Below the pieces are notes generated by a model. The model was not told the DNA's origin. It made no database searches and worked only from the letters and a program-made list of their open reading frames with translations. This document shows positions 6,615-46,730 of a stretch of DNA of 64,000 nucleotides, in pieces. Each line of letters starts with the position of its first letter. Within the stretch, counting starts at the first letter, position 1. Made by a program: the position numbers and the translations under genes. Source of the stretch: Macrostomum lignano (Eukaryota); the NCBI GenBank assembly GCA_002269645.1, contig NIVC01000952.1, forward strand, positions 551,220 to 615,219, in the 5' to 3' direction.

Positions 6615-7018
6615 GCCTGGTACCAGGTATTAACTGATTAACATACGATTTCTTTGTTGGACAGTTTTTGATGTTTTTCTAACATAAAAAAATTAAATTT
6701 ACCCTTTGTTATTGTTTAAATTGCCATTGCGTGTTAATGTCCAAAATGACATTAATGTCCAAAATAACATTAACACGCATCCCACGCGCGTGTTATTGTC
6801 ACCAAAAGTGCATAGCAATGGATGTCATTACCACGCTCGCGCGAAGTATATATGATTGAAAACATTGATGAAGGAATAACACAATCGAAACATTAAAAAG
6901 TTCCCACCTATTATTTTGTTTGTCAATGATAGCAAATCTTGAAAAATTTTTGCTCCTCCGTTTGAATTTTGCTGATTCGATACACGATACCGGTATAGAA
7001 TTTCAGCGACAATATATA

Positions 7019-7624
7019 CACTCAGCAACATTGAAAAGTTTCCACCCTCGCGCCAGCCGTGTATATTTAGAGTTTCAAAACTGATATTATGGTCGCCAGA
7101 CTTGTGCCATAAACGATTGATGACATTGATGCTTCATGTGGTGGCGTGGGGAACAGCGTCCTCCAAGACGACAACGCCCCACCGCATCGCGCAGCCGCTG
7201 TGGCGCATCTGAAGGAGCTGCTGCACCTGCGAACCTTGCGCTGGCAGTCCCGATCACCGGACATGAATCCCATAGAGCACGTTTGGGATTACCTGAAGCA
7301 CTCGATTCGGCGCGACAATCCGCCGCAAAACGTTGCCCAACTGCGCGAATCACTGTCTACTGCAGGGCAACAACTACCGCAAGTTTTCTGCGACGCCTGG
7401 TTCTGGGGATGCCCCGGAGAGTGAGCGCTCTGCTGCTATACGCGTCACTGACCCTGTTCTGGGCAAGTTGTCACCCATGCTCGCGTACTTTGTTTCTTTG
7501 CTGCCTTTGCTTCGTTCGAATCCGGATTATATATTCGTCTATGGCTCAAACCAAGAATATCTCCACCCACCAAAACGTTGACCCTTCGCGCGCTTGGGTG
7601 GAAACTTTTCAATGTTGCTGAGTG
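7019..7624 (+). mobile_element. Tc1 (DD34E) internal-deletion derivative, 606 bp
   Basis: Perfect 29-bp TIRs CACTCAGCAACATTGAAAAGTTTCCACCC (7019-7047 and 7596-7624) with TA on both sides. ORF 7146-7424 has QDDNAPPH...SPDMNPIEHVW, with 34 residues between D and E. Confidence 0.92.
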
Positions 7625-7694
7625 TATTTACAAACGACAAATACCGGCACGTCTCATCAAGCACTCATCTAAAACGGCTGCTTGACGGTCAGCT

Positions 7695-9966
7695 ATGCGA
7701 GCTCTCTGCAATCGGAGAAGTCTCATCTGCTCACAAAGAGACAGAGGAGGCACATGTTTCCGCCTGTCAATCAAACTCCCATTTCTGAGTGGCTTGTGCG
7801 TCGGAGCTGTGGTCACCTTCGCGCTGTTTAGTCTGCACAACAACAATCGAGCCATAATGTCGAACAGTTAAAATCAAAAGCCACTGCGGAAACATGCAAA
7901 TACAATTTATTCAAGTTCTTCAACTGCTAAAGCGGGCTTCCGAAAAAGCGGCAGCGCTACGAATTTTATGAGAATTACAAGGAATTGTTCCGCAGCATGG
8001 ATGAGTCTATGTACCACTTCGACAGCCAGGGCGTGCTGCTTCCGCTCATGCGGCTCTCCAAGGACGAGGAGAACTGGGCGTACCGAGCAGCAGCTGGCAG
8101 GGCTTGGATCCGCAGCCAGTCGGTGGTGGTAGCAGCCACGGTGCGCAACGGCATGGCCGGCCTACCGAGCACCATGCGTTACGTTCAGCGCCTCAGAGCT
8201 CTGTTCAATGAGTCCTGGGTGGTGATAGTGGAAAACGAATCGACAGACTTGACCCGCAGCTTCTTGTACAACATGACGCTGACTGATTCCAACATGTCGC
8301 TGCTGGGCTGCGGCCGGATCAACTCCCCGCTGCCGTGCAAGACCAACTACCGATACAGCACCAAGCGCGAGCACCGGCCCGGTCCGTATCACTACCGCAG
8401 CTTCGCGGAGGAGGTCGAGCGCGGCTTGATGATGTCCGCCCTGCGCAACATGTACATGGACTACATCTACGATCACCTGGCCGATCGAGCAACGTTTCTG
8501 TTGATAATGGATCCGGACATCAGCTGGAAAGAGTGGGATCTGGACAGCATCACCCAGGGACTTTACTACTTTGCGGCCAAGCCTAAGCTGCAGCAGCTGT
8601 GCGCGCATTCCACCTTCAACACCCACCTGTACGACCCGTGCACGCTGAGCTTCTACTTGAACAAACACTTCGGCGAGGACAAAAAGTACCCGGTGGTCGA
8701 CTACGAGAAGTCGATTCGGTTCGCGCCGCGCAGCCTGCCTATACGCGTTTTTCTCTGGGGCCTTTGAGTCGGTGTTCTCACTTTCTTAAGATAGATGTCT
8801 AGCGGTCTAAGGTTCTTACAGCTCTTAGTCTCTCCTATCAGGCCGTCAGAGAAAACCGTATAAACTGACGGGATCTCCTAGTATCTAAGCTGAGCTCGAT
8901 TCTCTCTAAGATTTGCTCTATGTCACAGTTAAGGCAAATGATCGATTTGAGACTCGGGTTTCTGTCAACTGGATAATCCAGAAACTAATTCAAATGGAGC
9001 AATTCAAGGTCGAAAACTGCGCAGGAAAAACGAAGCGCCGCTCCAGTTTGAAATGAGCGTCTATTTATACTAATTAGCATTTTCGACCTCCCCTGCCGCC
9101 GGTGGGGTGTCTTCGCGTTGTTAGCAACGGCGGGGGGGGGTTTGAGCAAAAACAATCTGGGACTCAGTCCCCTAATTGTACATGAATTTAGTTAGTTCTA
9201 ATAGGTTGCTAAGTGTGAGGGTTAGAGATTATTCGGGCTTTCGCAAATCTATGTGTTGAGTTGGATAAAATTTGGGATAGAAAGATTAAGAAAAAGTGCT
9301 TAGTTTTCCGTCTCTTGACTCTGTCCATTGATGATTAAACAGTCCTCTGTTTCTCTCGGTTGTCAGGCAGCTTGGGGTTGATCTCGCATTCTTGGGCAGC
9401 TTCGGGTTGGATAGAGTCTGTAGGGGCCTCACGTTTTCTCCCTCAGGGTGCGCCAGAAGATGCCGCGTGCCGCGTTGTTCTCTAAGCTGGCCGCTGCTCA
9501 GTTTGCTTTTCCCGGCCGGTTTAGTTGCCATTGTGCCTGCGGCGGGGTGACGCTACTAACTGGAATGGAAAGAGGCTTTATTAGATTCGGCTATTCAAAT
9601 TGACTTGACAGTTGATTAATTATCTTAAAGCTGCTTCTATTTGCTCTTCTAGTAGCTATCTGGGGGTTCCATTGTACTCTTCTGCCTCGCCCTTCACTGC
9701 GCCTGGGCTTTTCATAAATTTCTACCTATCTTCTAACTTGGGGTCAAAACTTCAGATTTCTAACTCTTATACTGCCGCCGGTGAAGGTGGGGAGCTGCTT
9801 CCAGGCCGTGTCGTTCTACCGGATGTCGGCTCTGGCGCCCCGCAGGCTGCGCTATCGACGCAGTCCTGGCGAGTGGATTTGCGAACACAACACGCTCTCC
9901 AGGCAGCTGGACGAGGTGTACATCGACCCGCAGATGCGGCTGAATGTCAGCTCGGAAAGTTCTTGA
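7695..9966 (+). CDS. GT-A fold glycosyltransferase (CAP59/GT69- or GT2-like, probable type II membrane protein), interrupted by an insertion
   Basis: Short 5' ORF 7695-7866 with a TM-like segment (LPFLSGLCVGAVVTFALFSL); splice join to the main exon uncertain. Main frame open from 7931 with VVVAATVRN, VVIVENESTDLT, MSALRN and DxD (IMDPD). Removing 8740-9776 fuses in frame to ...SLPPVKVGSCFQAVSFYR...WICEHNTL...VYIDPQMRL, stop at 9966. Confidence 0.7.
8740..9771. mobile_element. 1,032-bp insertion with 5-bp TSD and TA...TA termini (solo-LTR-like or unclassified TE)
   Basis: TSD CTGCC at 8735-8739 and 9772-9776. Ends TATACGCGTT / AACTCTTATA match 8/10 as inverted repeats. Precise removal restores the reading frame. 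Confidence 0.8.
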
Positions 9967-12028: not shown

Positions 12029-15000
12029 TCAGTAGTGCTTGCCGCCGGGCTGCGATGGCCGCCTGTTGTAGGCGTTATTGAATGCCGAGGAGGCGCTGTT
12101 GGAGTCCGCGCGCTTCACGCGAGCATCTGAGCGATGCTGATGTTGGCGATGGCCGTGATGCTGGTGGTGGTGATGATGATGATGATGGTGCTGCTTGTTG
12201 GCTTTGGCCTCCTTGCGGTGCTTTTTGTACAGCCGGTGCAGCTCCGAGTGTGACAGCTCGGTGAAGTAGGACACAAAAGTCCACAGCCGGTTGCGCCAGG
12301 CGCGGATCTCGTCTGGCTGGCGGAACTGCCGGATCTCGTGGCCGATGTGGCTGCCGATCTTCAGCAGGTGCGCCCCGATCAGGTTGCCGTCTCGGTCCGC
12401 CTCGCAGTCCTGCAGCCGCTTCAGCGTCTTCTTCAGCGGCCGCATGTGCTCTTTGCAGGCGTTGAACACGGACTCCGGCAGGCGCTGCTCCTCGGCGTCG
12501 CCTCCGGGCTTCCCTGCGGCCTGCTTGCCCGGCTTCTTCTGCTGCTGCTGCTGCGGCTGCTGCTGCTCCTTGGACTTGACCGGCTGGCCGCTCTTTTGCT
12601 GCTTCTTTGGATGCTGCTGCTGCTTGGACTTGTGAATGGACACCGGCTGCCGGTTGGCCGTGATGTGCAGCGCCCGGGAGCCGCTGGCCGCCGGAGAATT
12701 CGAGCGCGACTGGGCAGCGGATGAGCTGGACGATGAGTCGGAGGAGTCAACGAACTCTTTTGAGATCGGCTGCTGCTGCTGGTGCTGTTGCTGCTGCTGC
12801 TGCTGCTGCTGCTGGCTTTGGTCCTTGCCTGCCGCGCCGACCGATGCGCCCGACGGCTTCGAGCGCCGACCGCCGCCACCGCTGACGGCGCCCGCGCTTC
12901 CAGCAGCTCCACCGGCGCCGGTGCCGCCCTCCTGATGCCGCTGCAGCATCTTCAGCAGGTAGTCGGTCCTGACGGGGGAGGTTGGGGTTGGAGTTGAGGT
13001 TGAGTCAGACTCCGCCCAGCTGATGTCACATCCCAGTCATGCGAAAAGGGTGAGGGTCACACTACAAACCTGGTGCGCAGATGGGCAGCCTGAGGCTTCA
13101 AGTTGTGGTCCCTCAGGATCTTGGCCCGCAGGCCCAGGTCCGGGTCGTCCTTGATAGCGTCCCAGCTGTCCATGCCGAACTCGTACACGCCAATCAGCAA
13201 GTTCGAGTCGTCAATCTCGTCCCACACGCAGTCCCAGGTGACAGTCTTGGTGTAGAAGGGCACCCTGTACTTCCGGCGCGCCTCCCTGTCTGCTGGCATC
13301 TCCCTGTGCAGCGGGGCGAGGTCCTTCTGCGACTGCAGCAGCGGCCGGGCCTGGATCACCACCCGGCCGAGCGTGAAGGACGGCGCGCTGGGCTTCGCCG
13401 AAGCCTCCTCGCCTGTCGCGAACGTGGCAGCCTTGGCGACGGCCCGCTCGCAGCCCTGCAGGATGGCTTCGACCAGGCGGCGGACCTCCGTCTCCGACTT
13501 CTCCTGCAGCTCCGCCTCCTCCACCACGCTGTCCAGCCGGTCCAGCGGGCTGGCGAACTTGCGCATCGCCTTGGCCAGGGCGCGGATCTCGCGGTCCGAC
13601 AGCTCCTCCTCGTCCTCGGCGCCCACGTTCAGCGGCTTGACCTGCGGGGGCGTTGACATGACAAAAAGTAAGGCAAACCTGACTGAGTGTCAGACTGTCT
13701 GACTGACTGTCTGACTGACTGCCTGACTGACTGACTGACTGACTGACTGACTGCCTGCCTGCCTGACTGCCTGACTGACTGACTGACTGACTGACTGCCT
13801 GCCTGCCTGACTGCCTGACTGACTGACTGCCTCGCTGACCTGCTTGCGCTGTCGCGGCCCCAGCTCGAGCTGCAGCAGACGCTCCTCGGCCTCCTCCTGC
13901 TCGATGCGGCGCCGACTCTCCTCGGGGATGATCTCCTCCCAGGTCTTGCTGGCCGCCGGCTCCGCTGACTGCCCGGCGGAGTCCCCGGCAGCCGTGGCCG
14001 TCGCTTGGCCTTTGCGCCTGCCGGAGGGCCCGCCGCCGGACATGATGATCTCCGTGTCCTCAAGGTTCTCCAGGTTCACCACCTGCGGGCGGATTGGCAA
14101 AAGCAGGTTGTTAAAGAGAATCTTGATGAAAAGCTCGGCTGAGCACATGTCTGGGTGGACAATATCCTGCTAGAGTTCGAACCAAGGACCACTGTTAGTA
14201 TTATAAGAGGACGTAAAATTTTGAAGCCAGTTTCTTGAAAAAAATCCGTATTTTTACAATGCAGTTGTTTCAGGCGGATTTTACTAGTGGTCCTTGGTTC
14301 GAGTCGGAAAGCTTTTCACACTCCTAAGAACTCCCATCTCCCAAGCTCTAAGTTTGTCTATGGCTAAGGCTACGAGCATGTACAGAACGGCATAGCAACC
14401 ACGAGCGACAGGTTCCAACCTTGAACTGCGACAGCAGCTCCTCGGCAGCTGCGGAGGTTGGCTGCAGCTCCTCGCGAGTCTCAGCGCTGCGCAGAATGGC
14501 GTCCAGGTCCACCTCGGCCTCGGACTCCTCGCCCTCCTTCTCGCGGAACAGGTCTGCGGCGCCGAACTTGAGGATGGCGGACAGTTCGTCCTTGGAGAAG
14601 GCGGGGTTGCCGGCGTCGCCTGGCTGACGCAGGCGGCCCGTGGTGTCCATGCGCTGAATGACCAGATGGTCCAGCACCATCTTCTGCTTGGCCCGTTCGA
14701 TGATGTCCTCCTCTACTGTGGCGCGGAGCACCAGGCGGTAGACCCGCACCTGGCGCGTCTGGCCGATGCGGTGGCACCTGGAAAATTGGAACGGATTTGG
14801 GATGTTTAGCTTTCGGTTGAGGATGTTTAGCCTCCGGTTGAGGATGTTTAGCTTCCGGTTGGGATGTTTAGCTTCCGGTTGGGGTGCGGTTGCTTGCGTA
14901 AACTGACCGAGGCAAACTTTTGTTCAAGCATCGAAGACCCACCTGGCCATCGCCTGCAGGTCATTCTGCGGGTTCCAGTCGCTGTCGAAGATGACCACGG

Positions 15001-18000
15001 TGTCAGCCGAGGCTAAGTTGACGCCGAGGCCGCCAGCTCGGGTGGACAGCAGGAAGCAGAAGTCCTGCGAACTCTCCGCATTGAAGGCGTCAAGCGCCTG
15101 TTTGCGGGCCTCGCCTAGAATGGTGCCGTCCAGTCGCTGGAAGGCCCAGTTGCGCAACGACAGGTACTCGGCCAGCACGTCCAGCATCATCACCATCTGA
15201 GAGAAGATCAGAACCCGGTGCCCGCCGGCTCGCAGATTCCACAGCAGCTTGTCCAGCAGCAACATTTTGCCCGAGCCCCTGATGAGGCTCTCCAGCCTCT
15301 CGCAGCGGTCCGTGAGCTGCGGCGGCTCCTGCACCAGAAAGGTGTGGTTGCAGCACTTTTTCAGTTCCATGATCAGGTTGAGGAAGGCGTTGGGCTTGTT
15401 CAGCATCTTGTAGTTCCTGCGGGGCGATAGGGGTTGCGGTGAGTTTTAATTCGGGCACTTATTTATGCGAGATTGTCAGGTAGGATTTTGTGAGATTCTC
15501 AGGTAGATTTATGTGAGATTCTCAGGTAGATTAATGCGAGATTGTCAGGTAGATTTATGCGAGATTGTCAGGTAGATTTATGTGAGATTCTCAGGTTGAT
15601 TTATGAGAGATTCTCAGGTTGATTTATGCGAGATTCTCAGGTTGATTTATGCGAGATTCTCAGATTGATTTATGCGGGATTCTCAGGTTGATTTATGTGA
15701 GATTCTCAGGTAGATTTATGCGAGATTGTCAAGTAGATTTATGCGAGATTGTCAGGTAGGATTTTGTGAGATTCTCAGGTTGATTTATGAGAGATTCTCA
15801 GATTGATTTATGTGAGATTCTCAGGTTGATTTATGCGGGATTCTCAGGTTGATTTATGCGGGATTCTCAGGTTGATTTATGCGGGATTCTCAGGTTGATT
15901 TATGCGGGATTCTCAGGTTGATTTATGCGAGATTCTCAGATTGATTTTGCGAGATTCTCAGGTTGATTTATGCGAGATTCTCAGGTTGATTTATGCGAGA
16001 TTCTCAGATTGATTTTGCGAGATTCTCAGGTTGATTTATGCGGGATTCTCAGGTTGATTTATGCGGGATTCTCAGGTTGATTTATGTGAGATTCTCAGAT
16101 TGATTTTGCGAGATTCTCAGGTGGATGTATGCGAGATTCTCAGATTGATTTATGCGAGATTCTCAGGTGGATTTATGCGAGATTCTCAGGTTGATTTATG
16201 CGAGATTCTCAGGTAGATTTATGCAAGATTCTCAAGTAGATTTATGCGAGATTCTCAGGTAGATTTATGCGAGATTCTCAGGTTGATTTATGTGAGATTC
16301 TCAGGTAGATTTATGAGAGATTCTCAGGTGGATTTATGCGAGATTGTCAGGTGGATTTATGCGAGATTGTCAGGTGGATTTATGCGAGATTGTCAGGTAG
16401 ATTTATGTGAGATTCTCAGGTAGATTTATGTGAGATTCTCAGGTAGATTAATGCGAGATTCTCAGGTAGGACTAGCAATCTTCGCCCCCCGTTGGGGGAC
16501 ATCTGTATAGAACCTCTGTTCTCTACAAGTAACAAAAAGATAGCCAAAAAAAGCCTTCACAAAAAAAGACAAAATACTCAAAGGAAGTGCAATGCAAAAA
16601 GAAATCATCCCAAGACAGCAAGCATCCCCCAGATAGCAAGCGTCCGCCAGATAGCAAGCATCCCCTACATAGATAGCATCCCCAAATAGCAAGCATCCAC
16701 CAGACAATAAGTAGCTAGTGCGACAATTTCCTTAGCATTATAGTGGCTCCTTTAAAATTCGCTTACTTTATGTTTGAAATTGTGTAAATTTTATGTTTGA
16801 CATGGTGGCTGTTTTATGTTCTACATGGCAACTGTTTTATGTTTGAAACGATGGCTTTTTAATGTCAGACATGGTGGCTCTTTTATGTTTTACATGGTGG
16901 CTCTTTTATGTTTGACATGGTGCCTCTTTATTGTTTGACATGGTGGCTCTTTAATGTTTAACCTGGTGGCTCTTGTTTGAAACAGTGGCTCTTTTATGTT
17001 TGACACAGTGGCTCTTTAATGTTCGACAAAGTGGCTATTTAATGTTTGACAAGGTGGCTTTTAAATGTTTGACATGGTGGCTCCTTAATGTTCGAAATGG
17101 TGGCTCTTTAATGTTTGACATAAAGACACATATATAATTGACATGGTGGCTCTTAAATGTTTGACATGGTGGCTCTTTAATGTTCGAGAAAGTGGCTCTT
17201 TAATGTTTTTCATGGTATGGCTCTTTTATGTTCGACATGGTGGCTCTTTTAGGTTTGACATGGTGGCTCTTAAATGTTTGACATGGTGACTCTTTAATGT
17301 TTCAAATGGTGGCTCTTTAATGTTTTACATGGTGGCTCTTAAATGTTTGACATGGTGGCTCTTAAATGTTTGACATGGTAGCTCTTTAATATTCTACATT
17401 GTGGCTCTTAAGTGTTCGAAATGGTGGATCTTTTAGGTTTGACATGATGGCTGTTTAATGTTCAACATAGTGGCTCTTTAATATTCTACATGGTGGCTCT
17501 TTTATGTTTAGCATGGTGGCTCTTAAATGTTTGACATGGTGGCTCTTTAATGTTCGAAATGGTGGCTCTTTTGTTTTACATGGTGGCTCTTTAATGTTTG
17601 ACATGGTGGCTCTTTAATGTTTGACATAAAGTCACTTATATGTTTGAAATGGTGGCTCTTTAATATTTTACATTGTGGCTCTTAAGTGTTCGACATAGTG
17701 GCTCTTTTAGGTTTAACATGGTGGCTCTTTTAGGTTTAACATGGTGGCTCTTAAATGTTCGACATGGTGGCTCTTTAATGTTCGACATGGTGGCTTTTTA
17801 ATATTCTTCATGTTATAGCTCTTTCATGTTTGACATGGTGGCTCTTTAATGTTCGACATGGTGGCTCTTTAATGTTCGAAATGGTGGCTCTTTAATGTTT
17901 GACACAAAGTCACATATATGTTTGACATGGTGGCTCTTAAATGTTTGACATGGTGGCTCTTTATGTTTGACATGTTGGCTCTTTTATGTTTGACATGTTG

Positions 18001-21000
18001 GCTCCTTTATGTTTGACATGGTGGCTCTTTAATGTTCGAAAAAGTGGCTCCTAAATGTTTGACATAGTGGCTCTTTGATGTTCGAAATAGTGGCTCTTTT
18101 ATGGTCGACATGGTGGCTCTTTAATGTTCGAAATGGTGGCTCTTTAATGTTCGAAAAAGTGGCTCTTTTATTTTCGACATGGTGGCTCTTTAATGTTCGA
18201 AATGGTGGCTGTCTAATGTTCGAAATGGTGGCTCTTTTATGTTTGACATAAAGTCACTTATATGTTTTACATGGTGCCTCTTAAATATTAGACATGGTGG
18301 CTCGTTTAGGTTTGACATGGTAGCTCTTTAATGTTCGACATGGTGGCTCTTTAATATTCGATATGTTGGCTCTTTATGTTTGACCTGGTGGCTCTTTTTC
18401 GTTCGAAATGGTGGCTCTTTTTTGTTCTACATGGTAACTCTTTTATATTTGATACGGTGGCTTTTTTAAAGTCTGACATGTTGGCTCTTTTATGTTTGAC
18501 ATAGTGGCTCTTTAATGTTTGACAATGTGGCTTTTGAATGTTTGACATGGTGGCTCTTTAATGATAGACATGGTGGCTCTTTAATGTACGACATAATGGC
18601 TCTTTAATGTTTGACAATGTGGCTCTTTAATGTTCGAAATGGTGGCTCTTTAATGTACGACATAATGGCTCTTTAATGTTTGACAATGTGGCTTTTGAAT
18701 GTTTGACATGGTGGCTCTTTAATGTTTTGACATGGTGGCTCTTTAATGTTAGACAAAGTGGCTTTTTAATGTTTGACATGGTGGCTCTTTTATGTTTGAC
18801 ATGGTGGCTCTTTACTGTTTGAAATGGTGGCCCTTTAATGTTCGAAATGGTGGCTCTTTTATGTTTGACATGGTGGCTCTTTTAGGTTTGACATGATGGC
18901 ACTTTTATGTTTTAACATGGTAGCTCTTAAATGTTTGACATGGTAGCTCTTAAATGTTTGACATGGTAGCTCTTTTATGTTCGACATGGTGGCTCTTTAT
19001 TGTTTGACATGGTGGCTCTTTAATGTTTAACCTGGTGGCTCTTTTATGTTTGACACGGTGGCTTTTAATGTCTGACATGGTGGCTCTTTTATGTTTTACA
19101 TGGTGGCTCTTCTATGTTTGACATGGTGGCTCTTTATTGTTTGACAAAGTGGCTATTTAATGTTCGAAATGGTGGCTCTTTAAAGTTTGACATAAAGTCA
19201 CATATATGTTTGAGATGGTGGCTCTTAAATGTTTGACATGGTGGCTCTTTAATGTTTGACATGGTGGCTCTTTAATGTTTGACATAGTGGCTCTTTAATG
19301 TTCTACATGGTGGCTCTTTTATGTTCGACATGGTGGCTTTTTAATGTTTGACATGGTGGCTCTTTTATGTTTGACATGGTGGCTCTTTACTGTTTGAAAT
19401 GGTGGCTCTTTAACGTTCTACATGGTAACTCTTTTATGTTTAATACGGTGGCTTTTTAATGTCTGACATGGTGGCTCTTTTATGTTTGACATGGTGGCTC
19501 TTCTATGTTTGACATGGTGGCTCTTTATTGTTTGACATGGTGGCTCTTTAATGTTTAACCTGGTGGCTCTTTTATGTTTGACACGGCGGCTCTGTAATGT
19601 TTGACAAAGTGGCTATTTAATATTCGAAATGGTGGCTCTTTAAAGTTTGACATAAAGTCACATATATGTTTGACATGGTGGCTCTTAAATGTTTGACATG
19701 GTGGCTCTTAAATGTTTGAAATGGTGGCTTTTTAATCGTTGACATGGAGTCACGTATATATTGACATAGTGCTTATTTTATGTTTGGCATGGTGGCTCTT
19801 TAATGTTCGAAATGGCTGGCTCTTTAATGTTCTTAATGGTGTCTGTTTTATGTTTGACATGGTGGCTCTTTAATGTTTGACATGGTGGCTCTTTAATGTC
19901 TTACATGGTAACTCTTTTATGTTCGATATGGTGGCTCTTTTATTTTTGACATGGTGGCTCTTTTATGTTTGACATGGTGGCTCTTTTATGTTTGACATGG
20001 TGGCTCTATAATGTTAGACATGGTGGCTCTTCAATGTTCGACATGGTGGCTCTTTAATGTTCGACATGGTGGCTCTATAATGTTAGACATGGTGGCTCTT
20101 TAATGTTCGAGCTTTCAAAAAAAACAACAGACATTCCCTCTAAAAAGAAAACATCCCAAGAGAGCAAGCATCCCCAGACGGCATGCAAGCATCCCCCAGA
20201 CCGCAAGCATCCCCCAGATAGCAAGCACCCCCCCCCCCGATAGCAAGCAACCCCCAGATAGCAAGCATTCCCGGATATCAAGCAATCTCAGATAGCAAGC
20301 ATCCCTGGATACAAAGAGTCCTTATAGATAGCTAGCAAACCACTCTCAGATAGCAAGTACCCACCACCCCCAAGAGCAAGCATCTCCCAATAGCAAGTTA
20401 CCCTAGTAGCAAGCATATTTCCGATAGCAAGCATCCCCCTGATAGCAAGTATCTATCCTTAAATAGCAAGCATCCACCAGAGAACAAGTAGCTAGTGCAA
20501 CAATTTCTATAGCTTTATAATGGCTCCATTTTGTTCGACATGACGCTTCTTTTTTTCGTTTCAAATTGTGTCTCTTTATGTTTGACATGGTGTCTCTTTT
20601 ATGTTTGACATGGTGGCTCTTTTATGTTTTGGTGGCTTTTTATTGTTTGACATGGAGTCATATATATGTTTGACATGGTAGCCTTTAATGTTAGACATGG
20701 TGGCTATTTAATGTTCGACATGTTCGCCTTTAATGTTCGACATGGTGGCTCTTTAATGTTCGACATGGTGGCTCTTTTATGTTTGACATTGTGCTTCTTT
20801 TATGTTTAGCATTTTGTGTTTTTAAGGTGTTTTAATAAAAAAATCTTTTTGCACTACTAAGATTCGAACCCAGGTCGCTACATTAGCAGTCCAGTCTGTT
20901 CGCATCTAGGCTATCTCTTTTTAATTTGAGAACATGAATTGTGGCCCTTATACTTCAATTCTTACAGCAATTCAGTTAGAGTAAAAAGTTATGACACAAT

Positions 21001-24000
21001 CAATTTCTCAGTCAGCCAGTATCAGTCTCAATTCAAGTTAGCAATATTGGTTACGCAATTTAAATCAAGTCGTGTGCATTTCTTCGGCACTGTTTTCAAC
21101 TGGTTGGGATGTAATCCTTATCACAATTGGAATTCAGTCAGTCAGTTTTTTTCTCTAGCATTCTTACAATGCATTTCAGGTCGAAAGAGCTGCTTGACCT
21201 TTGCAGAAAGCATGTTTTTCGAATATTTAATCCCTTTATCATAGAGCAATTTCTTAGCCAAGATGCATGTACCGTCCCAGGAAAATTTCTGATCGAATGG
21301 TACAAATCTGAAGAAAATCAGTTGAGCCAATTTTTCTTAAATCAATCGCATACCCATATACCCACAGACAACTCATTTTTAGTATATAGGACTAGCAATC
21401 TTCGCCCCCCGTTGGGGGACATCTGTATAGAATCTCTGTTCTCTACAAGTAATAAGAAGATAGCAAGCATCCCCCAGATAGCAAGCATCCCCCAGAGAGC
21501 AAGCATCCCCCAGATAGCAAGCATCCCCAAATAGCAAGCATCCACCAGACAATAAGTAGCTAAGTGCAACAATTTCCTTAGCTTTATAGTGGCTCCTTTA
21601 AATTGGCATGGCGCTTTATACCTTTACATTTGAAATTGTATATCTTTAATGTTTGACATGGTGGCTCTTTTATGTTGATATGGTGGCTCTTTTATGTTCT
21701 AAATGGTAGCTCTTTTATGTTCTAAATGGTAGCTCTTTTATGTTTGATATGGTGGCTCTTTTAATGGTCGACATGGTTGGTCTTTAATGTTCTTCATGAT
21801 GGCTGTTTTATGTTTGACATGGTGGCTCTTCAATGTTCGAAATGGTTGGCTCTTTAATGTTCTTAATGGTGTCTGTTTTATGTTTGACATGGTGGCTCTT
21901 TAATGTTTGACATGGTGGCTCTTTAATGTCTTACATGGTAACTCTTTTATGTTCGATATGGTGGCTCTTTTATTTTTGACATGGTGGCTCTTCTATGTTT
22001 GAAATTGCGCTTCTTTTATGTTTAGCAGTTTTTTGTTTTTAAGTTGTATTAATAAAAAAATCATTTTGCGCTACTAAGATTCGAACCCAGATCGCTACAT
22101 TAGCAGTCCAGTCTGTTCGCATTTAGGCTATCTTTTTTTCAATTGGAGCACATGAATTGTGGCCCTTATAATTCAATTCTTACAGCAAGTCAATTGGAGT
22201 AAAAAGTTATGACATAATCAATTTCTCAGTCAGCCAGAATCAGTCTCAATTTAAGTTAGCAATATGGTTACGCAATTTTAATCAAGTCGTGTGTGCATTT
22301 CTTCGACACTGTTTTCAATTTGTTGCGATGCAATCTTTATCAGAATTGAAATTCAGCCAGTCAGTTTTTTCTCTAGCATTCTTACAATGCATTTCAAGTC
22401 GAAATTTTTCTTGACCTTTGCAAGAAAGCATGTTTTTCGAATATTTAATCCCTTTCACATTTAGCAATTTCTTAGCTAAGATGCATGTACCGTCCCAGAA
22501 AAATTTCTGATCGAATGGTGCAAGTTTGAAGAAAATCGGTTGAGCCGTTTTTTCTGAAATCAATCGCATACCCATATACATACATACATACATACAGACA
22601 ACTCATTTTTAGGATATAGGATTTTGTGAGATTCTCAGGTAGATTTATGTGAGATTCTCAGGTAGATTTATGTGAGATTCTCAGGTAGATTTATGTGAGA
22701 TTCTCAGGTAGATTAATGCGAGATTCTCAGGTAGGATTTTGTGAGATTCTCAGGTGGATTTATGCGAGATTGTCAGGTAGGATTTTGTGAGATTCTCAGG
22801 TGGATTTATGCGAGATTCTCAGGTAGATTTATGCGAGATTGTCAGGTAGATTTATGCGAGATTGTCAGGTAGATTTATGTGAGATTCTCAGGATGATTTA
22901 TGAGAGATTCTCAGGTTGATTTATGCGAGATTCTCAGGTTGATTTATGCGAGATTCTCAGATTGATTTATGCGGGATTCTCAGGTTGATTTATGTGAGAT
23001 TCTCAGGTAGATTTATGCGAGATTGTCAGGTAGATTTATGCGAGATTGTCAGGTAGGATTTTGTGAGATTCTCAGGTTGATTTATGAGAGATTCTCAGGT
23101 AGGATTTATGCGAGATTGTCAGGTAGGATTTTGTGAGATTCTCAGGTAGATTAATGCGAGATTCTCAGGTAGGATTTTGTGAGATTCTCAGGTGGATTTA
23201 TGCGAGATTGTCAGGTAGGATTTTGTGAGATTCTCAGGTTGATTTATGCGAGATTCTCAGTTAGATTTATGCGGGATTTTCAGGTAGATTTATGCGAGAT
23301 TCTCAGGTAGATTTATGCGGGATTTTCAGGTAGATTTATGCGAGATTCTCAGGTAGATTTATGCGAGATTCTCAGTTAGATTTATGCGAGATTGTCAGGT
23401 AGGATTTTGTGCGATTCTCAGGTTGATTTATGAGAGATTCTCAGGTTGATTTATGCGAGATTCTCAGGTTGATTTATGTGAGATTCTCAGGTAGATTTAT
23501 GAGAGATTGTCAGGTTGATTTATGAGAGATTCTCAGGTTGATTTATGCGAGATTCTCAGGTTGATTTATGCGAGATTCTCAGGTAGATTTATGCGAGATT
23601 GTCAGGTAGATTAATGCGAGATTCTCAGGTAGATTTATGTGAGATTCTCAGGTAGATTAATGCGAGATTCTCATGAAGATTTATGCGAGATTCTCAGGTA
23701 GAATAATGCGAGATTGTCAGGTAGATTAATGCGAGATTCTCATGAAGATTTATGTGAGATTCTCAGGTAGATTTATGCGAAATTGTCAGGTAGATTTATG
23801 CGAGATTCTCAGGTTGATTTATGCGAGATTCTCAGTTAGATTTATGCGAGATTCTCAGTTAGATTTATGCGGGATTTTCAGGTAGATTTATGCGAGATTC
23901 TCAGGTAGATTTATGCGAGATTCTCAGGTAGATTTATGCGAGATTCTCAGGTAGATTTATGCGAGATTCTCAGTTAGATTTATGCGAGATTCTCAGGTAG

Positions 24001-27000
24001 AATAATGCGAGATTGTCAGGTAGATTAATGCGATATTTTCAGGTAGATTTATGCGAGATTCTCAGGTTGATTTATGCGATATTTTCAGGTAGATTTATGC
24101 GAGATTCTCAGGTAGATTTATGCGAGATTCTCAGTTAGATTTATGCGAGATTCTCAGGTAGAATAATGCGAGATTGTCAGGTAGATTAATGCGAGATTCT
24201 CAGGTAGATTTATGCGAGATTCTCAGGTAGATTTATGTGAGATTTCAGTTAGATTCGGAGATCAATAAGTTAATTATCCTTTATTAGGGCTAAACGTGAC
24301 CAAGTGTCTCACCGAGTCAGAATCCATTTATAAAACTGCTTCTGTTGGCGGCTCATCTCCACGCGCAGGATGCTCTCAGTCTTGGGCGGCAGGCTTTTCT
24401 CCACATCCTTTTTCACCCGGCGCAGTAGGTACGGCTCCAGCAGCTTGTGAAGGCCTTCAAATCCTTTGTTATTGTCGCCGTGATCCTCCTCGAAGTCCGG
24501 CCAACTGTGGAATGTGTCGGGCTGGATGAAGTGCAGCAGGGCCCACAGCTCGCGCAGGCTGTTCTGCAGCGGAGTGCCCGTGACCAGCAGGCGGGTGTTG
24601 GTCTTGAAGTCGATCAGAGTCTTGTACAGCAGGCTGTCGTCATTCTTCAGACGGTGCGCCTCGTCAACGCCAAGGAGGGCCCAGGAGACGGCGCCAAGCC
24701 AGCCGCGGTCCTTCAGCAGGATCTCGTAGGTGGTCAGGCACACGTTGAATTTGAGACGCCTGTTCACCTGAATAGATGGGTTGGATTGCAGCTGTTGGCC
24801 GACTGCCTCAGTCCTTTAGATGGTTAATGGGAATTGCTCAGAGTGCCTATGGCTAAGGGGGAATTGCTGAGAGTGCCTATGCCTAAGGGGGAATTGCTGA
24901 GAGTGCCTATGCCTAAGGGGGAATTGCTGAGAGTGCCTATGCCTAAGGGGGAATTGCTCAGAGTGCCTGCGGCTAAGGGGGAATTGCTCAGAGTGCCTGC
25001 GGCTAAGGGGGAATTGCTCAGAGTGCCTATGCCTAAGGAGGAATTGCTCAGAGTGCCTGCGGCTTAAGGGGGAATTGCTCAGAGTGCCTGCGGCTAAGGG
25101 GGAATTGCTTAGAGTGCCTGCGGCTAAGGGGGAATTGCTCAGAGTGCCTATGCCTAAGGGGGAATTGCTCAGAGTGCCTATGCCTAAGGGGGAATTGCTC
25201 AGAGTGCCTGCGGCTAAGGGGGAATTGCTCAGAGTGCCTATGCCTAAGGGGGAATTGCTCAGAGTGCCTATGCCTGGGGGGAATTGCTCAGATGGCCTGT
25301 GGCTCATGGGGAATTGCTCAGAGTGCCTGCGGCTCATGGGGAATTGCTCAGATGGCCTGTGGCTCATGGGGAATTGCTCAGATGGCCTGTGGCTCAGGGG
25401 CAATTGCTCAGATCGCTTGCAACTTAGAGCGCATTGCTGAAGTAGCACAAGATTCAGTTCGGGAGCCTTCAGAAAGAATCGAATATGGCAAAATATATAA
25501 AAATCATTCCATCAAATCTGGTCAATTTAACGCACCTGCTGCCATTCGTAGCTGCGAATAATATTCCTAGAGTCCACGTCGCCCAGGTACAAAATAACAT
25601 TCATCTGCGGGGCCCAGTTGGCGAATTCTCGCTTCCAGCCAATCACGGTAGACAGCGGCACAACCAATAGGAACGGGCCGTAGATCTCGTGCTCGTGGAA
25701 CAGCACAGATAGGAAGCAGATGGTCTGGATGGTCTTGCCGAGGCCCATCTCGTCGGCTAGGATGGACGAGTAGCCTCTGGTCCAGGAGTGATAGAGCCAG
25801 TTCACTCCGTCTAGCTGGTAGTCCCGGAGTCGATTCTCGGCGTTCTCGGGCGACATGTACTTTGGCTGCGACTTCAGCTGGCGAAACTTTGGCCGATATT
25901 TCAACGCCTGGTTGAAGAATTGAAGAAAATATGCTTTAACGTTACTAATAGTAGTCAAATCTTTCTAAGGCAGGGTCAGCAAAGTTTTTTACCGCAAGGG
26001 CTAGAGAGAACCTAGCGCACGACTCCGGACCAAAGGAGGGGAAAGAGAGAGAGGACAGAGAGGAGAGATAAGACATGAGTGAATAAAGGAGAAGAGAAGA
26101 GACAAAGTAGGACAGGAGAGAGGAAAGGAGAAGAGAGGAGAGAAGAGAGGAGGAGAGAAGAGGAGATGAGGGGAGAAAGGTGAAGAGAGAGAAGACAGGA
26201 GAGGAGAGAGAATAGGAGAGAGGTGGAGAGAGAAGACAGGAGAGAGAAGAGAGAAGGGAGGAAACGAGAGGAGAGAAGAAGAGAGAAGGGAGGAGAGGAG
26301 AGGAGAGGAGAGGAGAGAAGGGAGGAAACGAGAGGAGAGAAGAAGAGAGAAGGGAGGAGAGGAGAGGAGAGGAGAGAATAAGAGAGAAGGGAGGAGAGGA
26401 GAGGAGAGAAGAAGAGAGAAGGGAGGAGAGGAGAGAAGAAGAGAGAAGGGAGGAGAGGAGAGAAGAGGAGAGAAGGGAGAGAGGAGAGAAGAGGAGGAGG
26501 GAGAGGAGAAGAGAGAAGGGAGGAGAGGAGAGAAGAGGAGAGAAGGGAGGAGAGGAGAGAAGAGGAGAGAAGGGAGGAGAGGAGAGAAGAGGAGAGAAGG
26601 GAGGAGAGGAGAGAAGAGGAGAGAAGGGAGGAGAGGAGAGGAGAGAAGAGGAGAGAAGGGAGGAGAGGAAGAGAGAAGGAGAGAGGAGAGGAGAGAAGGG
26701 AGGAGAGGAGAGGAGAGGAGAGAAGAGGAGAGAAGGGAGGAGAGGAGAGGAGAGAAGAAGAGAGAAGGGAGGAGAGGAGAGGAGAGGAGAGAAGAAGAGA
26801 GAAGGGAGGAGAGGAGAGGAGAGGAGAGAAGGGAGGAGAGGAGAGGAGAGGAGAGAAGAAGAGAGAAGGGAGGAGAGGAGAGAAGGGAGGAGAGGAGAGG
26901 AGAGGAGAGAAGAAGAGAGAAGGGAGGGGAGGAGAGGAGAGAAGAAGAGAAGAGATAGGAGACTATTAGAGATGAGAGCTGACAAAGACAAAAATTCAAC

Positions 27001-33868: not shown

Positions 33869-43034
<9,166 letters not shown>

Positions 43035-44727
43035 GCGGCTTCCTGGGGATGGAAAATTGCAGGACAAATTATTTACATTTACTCTATTATTGACACGCAG
43101 GAATCTCGCAACGCGATCCATTACATTCCAATTTTTTTGTTTTTCTGTTTTTTTCTTTATACTAAAGTTAAAGTTCGTTGTTTAAACTCAGCTAGTTGGA
43201 ATATGATATTGGAATTATAAAATACATGGCCATTGCATTGTATTGGCGTAAACACATTTCAAATGGCCTTGCTACATGTAGGCAGACCTGGACTCTCAGC
43301 TTGTCGATGCGAGCTTGTTTATTTTAATCTAAGTTTTAATATCTAGCGAACACCCCGGTTGGAGGTTCTCCTCTCTGTTGCCTTTCGGCTGAAGATTTGC
43401 AAATCTTCATGCAAATTTGATCATATTTTGCTAAACTCTGTGAGGCAGAGCTGAGCCTTTGGTAGAGAGTGACTCATATCCAATGCACTCTTGATGCACT
43501 CTGGTAGAGATTGGCTCATATCCAATGCACTCTGGTAGAGAGTGGCTCATATCCAATGCACTCTTGCTGCACTCTGGTAGAGAGTGGCTCATATCCAATT
43601 CACTCTGGTAGAGAGTGGCTCATATCCAATGCACTCTGGTAGAGAGTGGCTCATATCCAATGCACTCTTGCTGCACTCTGGTAGAGATTGGCTCATATCC
43701 AATGCACTCTGGTAGAGAGTGGCTCATATCCAATGCACTCTGGTAGAGAGTGGCTCATATCCAATGCACTCTTGATGCACTCTGGTAGAGAGTGGCTCAT
43801 ATCCAATGCACTCTGGTAGAGAGTGGCTCATATCCAATGCACTCTTGCTGCACTCTGGTAGAGATTGGCTCATATCCAATGCACTCTGGTAGAGAGTGGC
43901 TCATATCCAATGCACTCTGGTAGAGAGTGGCTCATATCCAATGCACTCTGGTAGAGAGTGGCTCATATCCAATGCACTCTGGTAGAGAGTGGCTCATATC
44001 CAATGCACTCTGGTAGAGAGTGGCTCATATCCAATGCACTCTGGTAGAGAGTGGCTCATATCCAATGCACTCTGGTAGAGAGTGGCTCATATCCAATGCA
44101 CTCTGGTAGAGATTGGCTCATATCCAATGCACTCTTGCTGCACTCTGGTAGAGAGTGGCTCATATCCAATTCACTCTGGTAGAGATTGGCTCATATCCAA
44201 TGCACTCTTGCTGCACTCTGGTAGAGAGTGGCTCATATCCAATGCACTCTGGTAGAGATAGGCTCATATCCAATGCATTCTTTCTGCACTCTGGTAGAGA
44301 GTGGCTCATATCCAATGCACTCTGGTAGAGATTGGCTCATATCCAATGCACTCTGGTAGAGATTGGCTCATATCCAATGTGTGCGACTGTGACTGAGACT
44401 GCGCACTCTATCATTTTATTTTTTACTCTAGCCTCAAGGTTAGCAGTCAAGCAAAGACTGTGTGTGTGCGTGTTTCTGTCTATGTCATAGAATGCTATAT
44501 ATTTTGTATTTACTGTATTTTTTATGCTGAGAGCCAAGCCCGCAATTAAGCAATATAAGAGCCTGGAACAGAGGAATTCTAGACAAGCCTAACGCACAGG
44601 CAGACTTGTTGCTACAATATGGAAGACCTTCTCTTTGCCTTCCGTTAGCTGAATCACAGTCCGCTTCATAGGCAGCACAATGCACTCTTGCTGCACTCTG
44701 GTAGAGAGCGGCTTACAAGCAATGCAC

Positions 44728-45888
44728 CAATGCCGTCTACAGTAGGGCGAGGTCGTCCGCGTAGCCGAGGAGGGACAGCCTCTTCTCTGAGTGTCGCCGA
44801 CTGGTGCGCCTTTGCAGTAGGAAGCCGTCCTCTGCGGTCGGCAGGCCGGTCTTGAGCACCCAGTCCATTAGCAAAACAAAGGAAGGGCACTTCCTCTTTG
44901 TTTGCGCAGTGGCACCCTGCAGCACTTTAGAGGTTGTGCTGAACAGGTCCGACGGTCCGTCTGGCGTCGCTATCGCAGCGGTGGTGTCCTGGTACAGCGC
45001 CGTGATGGCGGGAGATCAGCTGCTGCGGTACGTTGTAGGCACGGAGCTCGTGAGGCAGCACACCGCGGGCCACCGAGTCGAAAGCCTTGAGGAAGTCAAA
45101 AAAGAAAAGATGACAACTAGGCTTGACTGGTGGAGCGGCGGAGGGCCAGGATCTGCGTCACTGTCCGACGACGATCAGGCTGAAACCCGTTCTGCTCGTA
45201 CCGCAGGTACGGGTCCAGCACAGGCTGTAACCATGCTAACAGCACCCGGTTGAACAGCTTCGCAGCGCAGGACACAAGCGAGATCCCGCGATGCTTCTCC
45301 ATCCGTGTGGCTCCCGGCTTCTTTGGGATGCCGACGATGTTGGCATGGGTCCACTCGTGGGGCGCGGCACCTTCCGCTAGGACGCCGTTCATCACGCGGG
45401 CCACCTCCATGGCAACCCTTGTGACTCTCAGCGTCTTGACGGGGACTTCGTCCGGACCGGGGTTGCGGCCTTCCGGTGCCTTGCGAACGAACTCCGCGTC
45501 AGTGCTGGTCACCGGACTGGTGTCTTGATCTTGCAGGGCGCGGAAATATCTTCTGGGGCGTTTTGTCCGCCTGTACAGCGGGTCGGAAAGCCGCAGGTCG
45601 CAGTAGAGCAGGCGGTGATCGGACCGGATGGCCAGGGGTTTCACGGTGTCGCAGTTCTTCAGCCGACTGCGTTCACGGTAGCGAACCAGCACGTGGTCGA
45701 GCTGCGCGAGGCGGGTCGTGGCGAAACGGCCTCGGGCGTTTCGCCTCCTTCGCGCTTGCAGCCGGCGAAGGTCGCCAGCCGGTAGGGCGGTTTACGGAAA
45801 CGCGTACTGGCCGACAACAGGTCGAGCCTCGCCATCAGGTCCGTTAGCGCGGTGGTGTTGGCGTTCTGGCGTGGCGACTGGTAGAAAG
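44728..45888 (-). mobile_element. degraded RTE-type non-LTR retrotransposon fragment, copy 1 (APE C-half to RT YADD)
   Basis: QLDHVLV...SDHRLL (APE); PGPDEVP, GISLVSCAAKLFNR, QNGF, GVLQG and GYADDLALL (RT). Several frameshifts. Confidence 0.85.
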
Positions 45889-46730
45889 TGGCTCATATCC
45901 AATGCACTCTTGATGCACTCTGGTAGAGAGTGACTCATATCCAATGCACTCTTGATGCACTCTGGTAGAGATTGGCTCATATCCAATGCACTCTGGTAGA
46001 GAGTGGCTCATATCCAATGCACTCTTGCTGCACTCTGGTAGAGAGTGGCTCATATCCAATTCACTCTGGTAGAGAGTGGCTCATATCCAATGCACTCTGG
46101 TAGAGAGTGGCTCATATCCAATGCACTCTTGCTGCACTCTGGTAGAGATTGGCTCATATCCAATGCACTCTGGTAGAGAGTGGCTCATATCCAATGCACT
46201 CTGGTAGAGAGTGGCTCATATCCAATGCACTCTGGTAGAGAGTGGCTCATATCCAATGCACTCTGGTAGAGAGTGGCTCATATCCAATGCACTCTGGTAG
46301 AGAGTGGCTCATATCCAATGCACTCTGGTAGAGATTGGCTCATATCCAATGCACTCTGGTAGAGATTGGCTCATATCCAATGTGTGCGACTGTGACTGAG
46401 ACTGCGCACTCTATCATTTTATTTTTTACTCTAGCCTCAAGGTTAGCAGTCAAGCAAAGACTGTGTGTGTGCGTGTTTCTGTCTATGTCATAGAATGCTA
46501 TATATTTTGTATTTACTGTATTTTTTATGCTGAGAGCCAAGCCCGCAATTAAGCAATATAAGAGCCTGGAACAGAGGAATTCTAGACAAGCCTAACGCAC
46601 AGGCAGACTTGTTGCTACAATATGGAAGACCTTCTCTTTGCCTTCCGTTAGCTGAATCACAGTCCGCTTCATAGGCAGCACAATGCACTCTTGCTGCACT
46701 CTGGTAGAGAGCGGCTTACAAGCAATGCAC

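What the first reader, a model, noticed from the sequence alone, without database searches (positions are those of the whole stretch)
7695..9966. Microbial/fungal-type glycosyltransferase in an animal genome: HGT candidate
The reconstituted protein (about 330 aa catalytic part plus an N-terminal TM exon) has the motif order RN...ENxSxDxT...LRN...DxD...SCF...Y...CEH...YIxP. From memory this resembles CAP59/GT69-like and related GT-A enzymes of fungi, bacteria, protists and giant viruses, which are not standard in bilaterian models. The catalytic region is intron-free while neighbouring host genes are intron-rich, but an added TM exon suggests domestication for the Golgi. It could represent an undescribed glycosylation capacity.
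Basis: partly seen in the sequence, partly recalled or inferred. Interest (0 to 1): 0.75.

Follow-up and report, generated by a model that had tools for sequence, protein, structure and literature searches.

The report
Broken flatworm copy of virus-like glycosyltransferase
This is a disrupted copy of a sugar-transferring enzyme gene from a family that, among named organisms I could check, occurs only in the flatworm Macrostomum, and whose nearest traceable relatives are in giant viruses; an old gene transfer is plausible but unproven.

Summary
The window is Macrostomum lignano or a very close relative, 95-97% identical and syntenic to GenBank contig NIVC01000180.1, with CHD1 next door.

The protein models confidently as a GT-A glycosyltransferase (pLDDT 84). 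It matches Pfam CAP59_mtransfer over the whole domain but below threshold (25.9 vs 28.8 bits).

Among hits that carried a source name, only M. lignano appeared, with at least seven paralogue groups. The score then drops to about 25-30% identical proteins. Every relative with enough contig to judge lies in giant-virus-like DNA or in Bacteroidota polysaccharide clusters.

- The sister locus is one uninterrupted exon.
- The "TM exon plus intron" is an in-frame TAA (7869-7871) plus a 1-nt frameshift near 7929.
- The "1-kb intron" (8740-9771) is an insertion flanked by a CTGCC duplication and absent from the sister locus.

This copy is therefore probably a pseudogene, although intact near-identical copies exist elsewhere in the genome. 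Viral homologues also carry the N-terminal membrane anchor, so it is not a host add-on. Gene transfer remains an open candidate: neither refuting outcome occurred, but no tree with eukaryotic outgroups could be built.

The parts
7695..7868 (+). N-terminal cytoplasmic tail and signal-anchor (TM about 7776-7835), codons 1-58 of the ancestral single-exon gene
   Evidence: ORF. Hydropathy above 1.9 for residues 28-47. Identical over all 58 residues to the N-terminus of P0001 and differing from P0178 at one residue.
7869..7871 (+). In-frame TAA stop where the sister locus has TAC (Tyr)
   Evidence: Pairwise alignment of the window with L001. P0001 and P0178 read ...MSNSYDQKP... here.
7929..7932 (+). 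1-nt deletion plus a substitution, shifting the frame between the anchor and the catalytic part
   Evidence: No GT/GC-AG intron restores the frame.
7931..8739 (+). Stem region and first part of the GT-A catalytic domain: beta1-RN, ENESTD nucleotide-binding motif 8231-8248, LRN 8441-8449, DPD (DxD) 8510-8518
8735..8739 (.). Left copy of the 5-bp target-site duplication CTGCC
   Evidence: The blastn segments overlap by 5 bp on L001 (11042-11046). Sequence read.
8740..9771 (.). 1032-bp insertion splitting the catalytic domain. It is absent from the sister locus, single-copy in the window, shows no RNA or protein signature, and contains an internal copy of the target site at 9093-9104
9772..9776 (.). 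Right copy of the duplication CTGCC
9777..9966 (+). Last part of the catalytic domain (PVKV-SCF 9793-9801, CEH 9880-9888, YIDP) and the stop codon at 9964-9966
7146..7424 (+). Context: remnant of a DDE_3 (Tc1/mariner-type) transposase just upstream, shared with the sister locus
   Evidence: Pfam DDE_3 E 3.8e-7. It lies inside the aligned block 6734-8739.
12029..13659 (-). Context: 3' exons of the host gene CHD1 (CHD1-like_C, HTH_CHD1, SANT-HL1). Similarity to the L001 block that holds CHD1 runs upstream to at least 25.4 kb

Best explanation
The locus is a disrupted, probably pseudogenised, copy of a Macrostomum multigene family.

What intact members encode: type II membrane proteins of about 400 aa. 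They have a short cytoplasmic tail, one signal-anchor helix, a poorly conserved stem, and a luminal GT-A catalytic domain.

Inferred mechanism for intact members:
- VEN(D/E)SxDxT at the end of beta2 is the counterpart of the GT2 'DDGSTDGT' motif and binds the nucleotide of a nucleotide-sugar donor.
- DPD after beta4 is the DxD motif that holds Mn2+ and the diphosphate. The C-terminal CEH histidine probably completes the metal site.
- Conserved cysteines fit a secretory-pathway enzyme.
- Donor and acceptor are unknown. By analogy with Cmt1/CAP59 the donor could be GDP-mannose.

Why this copy cannot make that protein:
- A TAA stop and a frameshift separate the anchor from the catalytic domain.
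- A 1-kb insertion cuts the domain before the SCF and CEH motifs.

Origin: the family is a very divergent branch of the CAP59-like GT-A group. Its nearest traceable relatives are giant-virus glycosyltransferases. An old transfer followed by expansion in the flatworm lineage is the leading but unproven account.
For: Identity and synteny:
- The window is 95-97% identical to M. lignano NIVC01000180.1, including CHD1.

Family and fold:
- PF11735 matches at E 9.3e-6, 25.9 bits, over profile 4-228/242.
- An exhaustive profile search gave 795 hits at E <= 0.001.
- 60 of 66 members hit PF11735 and 42 hit Glycos_transf_2.
- Invariant columns are E-N-x-S-x-D..R, LRN, DxD and CEH.
- AF2 gave pLDDT 84.2 and pTM 0.84.
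- All top PDB matches are GT-A enzymes.
- The best viral match is a Marseillevirus LCMAC102 glycosyltransferase, E 2e-24, TM 0.73-0.80.

Lesions:
- Stop, frameshift and insertion are defined against L001.
- No splice rescue exists for the stop and frameshift.
- dN/dS against L001 is 0.72, from 10 nonsynonymous and 4 synonymous changes.
- Intact copies more than 90% identical exist: P0178, P0176, P0177.

Residence in the host genome:
- GC3 is 0.82, against 0.77-0.92 for CHD1 exons.
- Paralogue P0004 has a 677-nt GT...AG intron inside the catalytic domain.
- The Macrostomum-type clade has 100/100 NJ bootstrap support.

Relatives' contexts:
- 26 IMG/VR giant-virus loci.
- Giant-virus-like contigs L030, L032, L037, L041, L043.
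- A bacterial Wzx/Wzy cluster and Bacteroidota genomes.
Against: - The three lesions could be assembly errors or belong to one haplotype. I have no reads.
- A canonical GT (8747) ... AG (9786) pair could remove the insertion in frame, giving LPIRVGS instead of LPPVKVGS. The insertion alone therefore need not be fatal.
- dN/dS rests on only 14 changes.
- No Macrostomum paralogue reaches the Pfam gathering score; the best is 27.6 bits.
- Metal and donor roles of residues are inferred from GT-A enzymes in general, not measured.
- About 100 of the top 150 hits have no known source, so other animals may be hidden among them.
- Giant viruses often take genes from their hosts, so viral neighbours do not fix the direction of transfer.
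Confidence: 0.75

Rival explanations
1. The gene is functional. The stop codon and frameshift are sequencing or assembly errors, or are allele-specific, and the 1-kb insertion is spliced out as a newly gained intron.
For: - A GT (8747) ... AG (9786) pair restores an open frame across the insertion.
- The remaining catalytic ORF has no other stops.
- Coding divergence from L001 (1.6%) is lower than in the flanks (3-5%).
- The GenBank sister copy also carries a 1-nt indel at its 3' end, which might reflect long-read error.
Against: - Three independent lesions are present.
- One is a substitution (TAC to TAA), which is not a typical long-read error.
- No canonical intron rescues the 7869-7930 region.
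- The cryptic splice would replace the conserved PVK before SCF; K is invariant in alignment A4.
- The insertion has a target-site duplication, which marks an insertion rather than an old intron.
Confidence: 0.15
2. The family is an ancient eukaryotic CAP59/GT69-type gene, inherited vertically and lost from most animals. Giant viruses captured it from protist hosts, and no transfer into flatworms occurred.
For: - GT69/CAP59 is widespread in fungi and occurs in a cryptophyte (PMC6260743).
- Macrostomum paralogues are as little as 40-46% identical to each other, one has an intron, and codon usage is host-like, so the family is old in this lineage.
- Identity to viral proteins is only 25-30%, so there is no recent donor.
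Against: - No named animal, fungal or protist protein appeared among the hits whose source I could read.
- Proteins of fungal Cmt1/CAP59 size (which I recall as about 450-600 aa) are nearly absent from the top 150 hits, which are mostly 280-370 aa.
- The Pfam model, which I take to be built mainly from fungal sequences (from memory, not checked), scores the flatworm proteins at only 17-27 bits, while the flatworm profile scores virus-type proteins at 100-138 bits.
Confidence: 0.3
3. The sequence is contamination or a mis-assembled piece of viral or microbial DNA, not a flatworm gene.
For: The closest traceable relatives are viral and bacterial.
Against: - The same gene sits beside CHD1 in two independent assemblies, inside an 832-kb contig.
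- GC3 is host-like.
- At least seven paralogue groups lie on different large contigs.
- One paralogue has a spliceosomal intron.
- Host minisatellites and a transposase remnant flank the gene.
Confidence: 0.02

Closest known systems
Giant-virus (Nucleocytoviricota) CAP59-like glycosyltransferases, e.g. A0A481YUL9 of Marseillevirus LCMAC102, the Marseilleviridae-size genomes in IMG/VR, and homologues in Mimiviridae sp. ChoanoV1 and Sylvanvirus
   Same: - Same domain over its full length, with the same invariant residues (ENDSxDxTR, LRN, DxD, SCF, CEH).
- Same type II layout with an N-terminal anchor.
- Best structural match by far, E 2e-24 and TM 0.73-0.80.
   Different: - Only 22-30% identical.
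- Flatworm proteins are about 70 aa longer in the stem.
- They carry a roughly 13-residue insert before the LRN helix, have DPD instead of D(L/M)D, and SCFQA instead of SCFGG.
- None of these viral proteins has a tested function, as far as I found.
Cryptococcus Cmt1/CAP59 family (Pfam PF11735, CAZy GT69, alpha-1,3-mannosyltransferase)
   Same: - Weak but full-length profile match.
- GT69 is itself predicted to be GT-A (PMC8476585).
- Golgi-type membrane glycosyltransferases.
   Different: - The window protein and all flatworm paralogues score below the Pfam gathering cut-off, 17-27.6 against 28.8 bits.
- Mannosyltransferase activity is not shown for this branch.
GT2-type GT-A enzymes and solved GT-A structures (COLGALT1/GT25, L. 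monocytogenes RmlT, GalNAc-T2, ArnC)
   Same: Same fold, the DxD motif after beta4, and an N-terminal acidic nucleotide-binding motif. 42 of 66 family members also hit Pfam Glycos_transf_2.
   Different: Sequence identity is 9-15% and TM is only about 0.5. The C-terminal half (SCF...CEH) is specific to the CAP59-like group.
Bacteroidota CAP59-like transferases in Wzx/Wzy polysaccharide gene clusters (P0172; Flavobacteriales, Vicingaceae, Flavobacterium sp. P21)
   Same: Same Pfam family and the same motifs.
   Different: They are more distant from the flatworm proteins (22-23% identity), have no N-terminal anchor, and lie in an operon context.

Membership tests
GT-A fold glycosyltransferases | Single Rossmann-like alpha/beta/alpha domain that superposes on solved GT-A enzymes | tested here: met
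   AF2 pLDDT 84.2. The 50 Foldseek PDB matches shown are GT-A enzymes or their complexes; the best is COLGALT1 at E 3e-8, TMq 0.53.
GT-A fold glycosyltransferases | DxD metal-binding motif directly after the fourth beta strand | tested here: met
   D194-P-D196 (8510-8518) follows strand 189-193 in the model. D196 is invariant and D194 near-invariant across 28 sequences.
GT-A fold glycosyltransferases | Metal-dependent transfer from a nucleotide sugar | not testable with these tools
   Needs an enzyme assay on an intact paralogue.
Pfam PF11735 CAP59_mtransfer / CAZy GT69 | Score at or above the curated gathering cut-off (28.8 bits) | tested here: not met
   Window protein 25.9 bits. Paralogues score 16.7-27.6 bits or give no hit. 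Nearest outgroup P0011 passes at 32.8 bits.
Pfam PF11735 CAP59_mtransfer / CAZy GT69 | Match spans the whole domain and homology is linked through intermediate sequences | tested here: met
   Profile positions 4-228 of 242. The flatworm profile finds virus-type proteins at E 1e-35 to 1e-13, and 60 of 66 of these hit PF11735, best E 5.8e-12.
Pfam PF11735 CAP59_mtransfer / CAZy GT69 | GDP-mannose alpha-1,3-mannosyltransferase activity; CAZy/dbCAN assignment | not tested
   No dbCAN tool and no assay were available.
Horizontally acquired gene in an animal | Physically linked to undoubted host genes (not contamination) | tested here: met
   Adjacent to CHD1 in the window and in the 832-kb contig NIVC01000180.1.
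Horizontally acquired gene in an animal | Absent from other animals | tested here: inconclusive
   All named hits are M. lignano. However, only about 55 of the roughly 175 proteins seen could be traced to a source, and hits 151-795 were not listed.
Horizontally acquired gene in an animal | Nested within a donor clade in a phylogeny | tested here: inconclusive
   In the NJ tree the flatworm clade has 100/100 support. Its sister is an unplaced metagenome protein, P0011 (73/100). The rest is mostly virus-like. No fungal or protist outgroups were available.
Pseudogene | Premature stop, frameshift or disrupting insertion relative to intact relatives | tested here: met
   TAA at 7869-7871, 1-nt deletion near 7929, and a 1032-bp insertion at 8740-9771. 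Intact copies P0178 and P0176 exist.
Pseudogene | Relaxed selection; lesions confirmed in reads; no full-length transcript | tested here: inconclusive
   dN/dS is 0.72 on 14 changes. Reads and RNA-seq were not available.

The most novel reading that the evidence does not exclude
A glycosyltransferase gene passed between a giant virus (or its protist host) and an ancestor of Macrostomum. It acquired host codon usage and an intron, then expanded into at least seven paralogue groups. This would give this flatworm lineage a glycan-building activity that other animals lack. The window shows one recently decayed copy of that family.
Probability: 0.35. Interest if true: 0.65.

Novelty: new member of a known kind. 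Interest (0 to 1): 0.42.

Why it matters
If the family really is confined to Macrostomum among animals and came from a giant virus or a microbe, it would be a rare, well-anchored case of an animal keeping and expanding a foreign glycosyltransferase. It would also point to unusual glycans in a regeneration and bioadhesion model organism.

It would give a first functional handle on a large, uncharacterised group of giant-virus glycosyltransferases.

For annotation, this locus should be marked as a disrupted copy, not as a three-exon gene. In addition, the GenBank model Mlig030790g1 has a frameshifted C-terminus.

Tried and rejected
- Splice rescue of the 5' lesions. I scanned all GT/GC-AG pairs between 7760 and 8000 for one that joins the anchor ORF to the catalytic ORF. 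None exists.
- First junction guess. I joined 8746 to 9787 at GT...AG, giving LPIRVGS. I dropped it as the ancestral structure because every homologue reads LPPVKV and the sister locus has no intron there. I kept it as a possible cryptic splice.
- Insertion as a known element. It has no second copy in the window or in L001, no tRNA, no Rfam match and no clear terminal inverted repeats.
- PDB sequence search with the single protein gave only chance hits.
- The first AF2 run on a 7-sequence alignment was too poor to use, pLDDT 57.5.
- Two profile searches of the word-indexed protein database were swamped by the 8000-candidate limit and returned few relatives.
- Literature searches for this family in Macrostomum, for CAP59 in giant viruses, and for PF11735 found nothing relevant.
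- Contamination was rejected on synteny, codon usage and an intron in a paralogue.

Full report
**What is in the sequence**

On the + strand an ORF runs from 7931 to 8739 and continues in frame at 9777-9963, with the stop at 9964-9966. This gives a 331-aa product. An ATG at 7695 opens a 58-codon ORF with a hydrophobic segment at residues 28-47.

- RN 8144-8149
- ENESTD 8231-8248
- LRN 8441-8449
- DPD 8510-8518
- SCF 9793-9801
- CEH 9880-9888
- YIDP

These are the invariant or near-invariant columns of the protein family.

**Which genome, and the true gene structure**

A protein search returned four Macrostomum lignano hypothetical proteins, at 93, 74, 69 and 54% identity, plus two environmental fragments.

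The best hit, P0001 (Mlig030790g1), lies on the 832-kb GenBank contig NIVC01000180.1, next to CHD1. It is encoded by a single 1212-nt exon. The window aligns to that locus at 95-97% identity from about 740 to 25,400, including CHD1. The window is therefore M. lignano or a very close relative, and this is a second copy of the same chromosomal region.

Against that locus the window shows three lesions:
- TAA at 7869-7871 where the sister locus has TAC.
- A 1-nt deletion plus a substitution at about 7929-7932.
- 1032 extra bases at 8740-9771, flanked by a 5-bp direct duplication, CTGCC.

No GT/GC-AG pair can splice around the stop and frameshift.

The insertion is single-copy in the window and has no tRNA or Rfam signature. 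It contains an exact 12-nt copy of the target site (CTGCCGCCGGTG at 9093-9104, also at 9772-9783), which suggests a composite event.

A canonical GT (8747) ... AG (9786) pair could remove the insertion in frame. That splice would change the conserved LPPVKV to LPIRV.

Intact copies more than 90% identical exist elsewhere in the genome: P0178 (411 aa) and P0176/P0177 (398 aa). The GenBank sister copy has its own 1-nt deletion, which scrambles its C-terminus. dN/dS between the two copies is 0.72, based on 10 nonsynonymous and 4 synonymous changes. This is consistent with relaxed constraint but weak.

**What the protein is**

Sequence evidence:
- Pfam gives a single hit, CAP59_mtransfer (PF11735), at E 9.3e-6 and 25.9 bits. 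It covers profile positions 4-228 of 242 but falls below the 28.8-bit cut-off.
- No flatworm paralogue reaches the cut-off; the best is 27.6 bits.
- An exhaustive profile search of 1.84 billion representative proteins found 795 relatives at E <= 0.001.
- Of 66 aligned members, 60 hit PF11735 (best E 5.8e-12) and 42 hit Glycos_transf_2.

Structural evidence:
- With a 28-sequence alignment, AlphaFold2 gave pLDDT 84.2 and pTM 0.84.
- The 50 Foldseek PDB matches shown are GT-A enzymes or their complexes: COLGALT1, RmlT, K4CP, GalNAc-T2 and ArnC, with E down to 3e-8.
- In the model, VENESTD ends beta2 and DPD follows beta4, which are the canonical GT-A positions.

The assignment of VEN(D/E)SxDxT as the nucleotide-binding counterpart of the GT2 DDGSTDGT motif is inference from general knowledge of GT-A enzymes. 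So are DPD as the metal-binding DxD and the CEH histidine as a further metal ligand. GT69 itself has been predicted to be GT-A (PMC8476585).

**Who else has it**

After the Macrostomum proteins, scores fall from about 1e-94 to 1e-35, and identity falls to 25-30%.

The flatworm has at least seven paralogue groups: Mlig030790/003076/029645, 023516, 031518, 008975/021081, 008488, 033934 and 026086.

Every other hit I could trace is unnamed metagenome or SRA-derived sequence. Where the contigs are long enough, the context falls into three groups.

Giant-virus-like contigs, with dense intronless ORFans plus hallmark genes:
- DNA polymerase B (L030).
- dUTPase, intein-bearing AAA protein and patatin (L032).
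- A 311-kb TARA scaffold with kinases (L037).
- Topoisomerase IIA and RNase III (L041).
- Ubiquitin-conjugating enzyme and XPG nuclease (L043).

IMG/VR viral contigs:
- A scan gave 26 loci, including GVMAGs and genomes of 346,754, 380,011 and 369,360 bp.
- From memory, not tested here, these sizes match Lausannevirus, Tunisvirus and Melbournevirus.
- The best predicted-structure match is a Marseillevirus LCMAC102 glycosyltransferase at E 2e-24, TM 0.73-0.80. Sylvanvirus and ChoanoV1 proteins follow.

Bacterial members:
- A more distant branch sits in Bacteroidota Wzx/Wzy polysaccharide clusters.

The viral proteins also begin with a hydrophobic anchor. The anchor is therefore not something the host added.

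**Phylogeny and domestication**

- In an NJ tree of 84 sequences the Macrostomum-type proteins form a clade with 100/100 bootstrap support. Their sister is a metagenome protein of unknown origin, P0011 (1342-bp contig, 37% GC), at 73/100.
- GC3 of the gene (0.82) matches the CHD1 exons (0.77-0.92).
- Paralogue P0004 has a 677-nt GT...AG intron inside the catalytic domain. P0001 and P0002 are single-exon.
- Paralogues are as little as 40-46% identical to P0002.

The family has therefore been resident in this lineage for a long time. It is not contamination.

**Verdict on the HGT idea**

The best hits are not a broad metazoan clade, and the fold is GT-A.

The evidence still falls short of showing transfer:
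- Most hits are unnamed.
- Only the top 150 of 795 were listed.
- No fungal or protist sequences were available as outgroups.
- Viruses often capture host genes, so viral neighbours do not fix the direction.

I put about 0.35 on a virus- or protist-linked transfer and about 0.3 on ancient vertical descent with loss. The remainder is other or unresolved.

**Verdict on this locus**

This locus is a decayed copy and adds no activity of its own.

I found no paper describing this family in Macrostomum. The proteins are in public databases as hypothetical or "glycosyltransferase family 2" proteins.

Noticed in passing
window 7146-7424 (+): Remnant of a DDE_3 (Tc1/mariner-type) transposase ORF immediately upstream of the glycosyltransferase start. 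It is also present at the sister locus (Pfam E 3.8e-7).
   Followed up: partly
window 9093-9104 and 9772-9783: An exact 12-nt copy of the insertion target site (CTGCCGCCGGTG) lies inside the 1-kb insertion. This suggests two nested insertion events or a templated rearrangement rather than a single simple insertion.
   Followed up: partly
L001 11133 (M. lignano NIVC01000180.1), GenBank protein PAA88663.1: The annotated sister gene Mlig030790g1 has a 1-nt deletion relative to the window (window position 9863). This replaces the conserved C-terminus (SPGEWICEH...YIDP) with unrelated residues. Both copies of this locus carry different ORF lesions.
   Followed up: partly
window 15461-16467, 16789-20107, 22620-24255, 35688-38926, 39468-41398, 52800-54041, 55331-57195: Very long minisatellite arrays with 18-36-bp units and up to 169 copies, several of them inside CHD1 introns. 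The array at 35688-38926 produces a spurious 1120-aa ORF on the - strand.
   Followed up: partly
window 44401-46403 and 46404-48406: Two 2003-bp units that are 100% identical in tandem, with a third diverged unit following. Each holds a fragment resembling a non-LTR retrotransposon reverse transcriptase (by eye; not tested against Pfam). This could be a very recent duplication or an assembly artefact.
   Followed up: partly
window 26034-26962: About 930 bp of almost pure purine (GA-rich) low-complexity repeat on the + strand, with GC skew 0.9 and AT skew 0.9.
   Followed up: no
P0010 (UniRef A0A1I8FAJ4) and P0127 (A0A1I8FN47), M. lignano: Two older M. lignano gene models, named RING-type E3 ubiquitin transferase and DHC_N2 domain protein, contain fragments of this glycosyltransferase domain. 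These are probably fused or mis-joined models.
   Followed up: no
L034 (Logan SRR31628434, 1193 bp) and L035 (JGI 3300040801, 932 bp): Environmental or SRA contigs encode Macrostomum-type members at 57% identity and 51-58% GC. L034 has a frameshift between its N- and C-terminal halves. They probably come from other macrostomid-like animals, but the source organism is unknown.
   Followed up: partly
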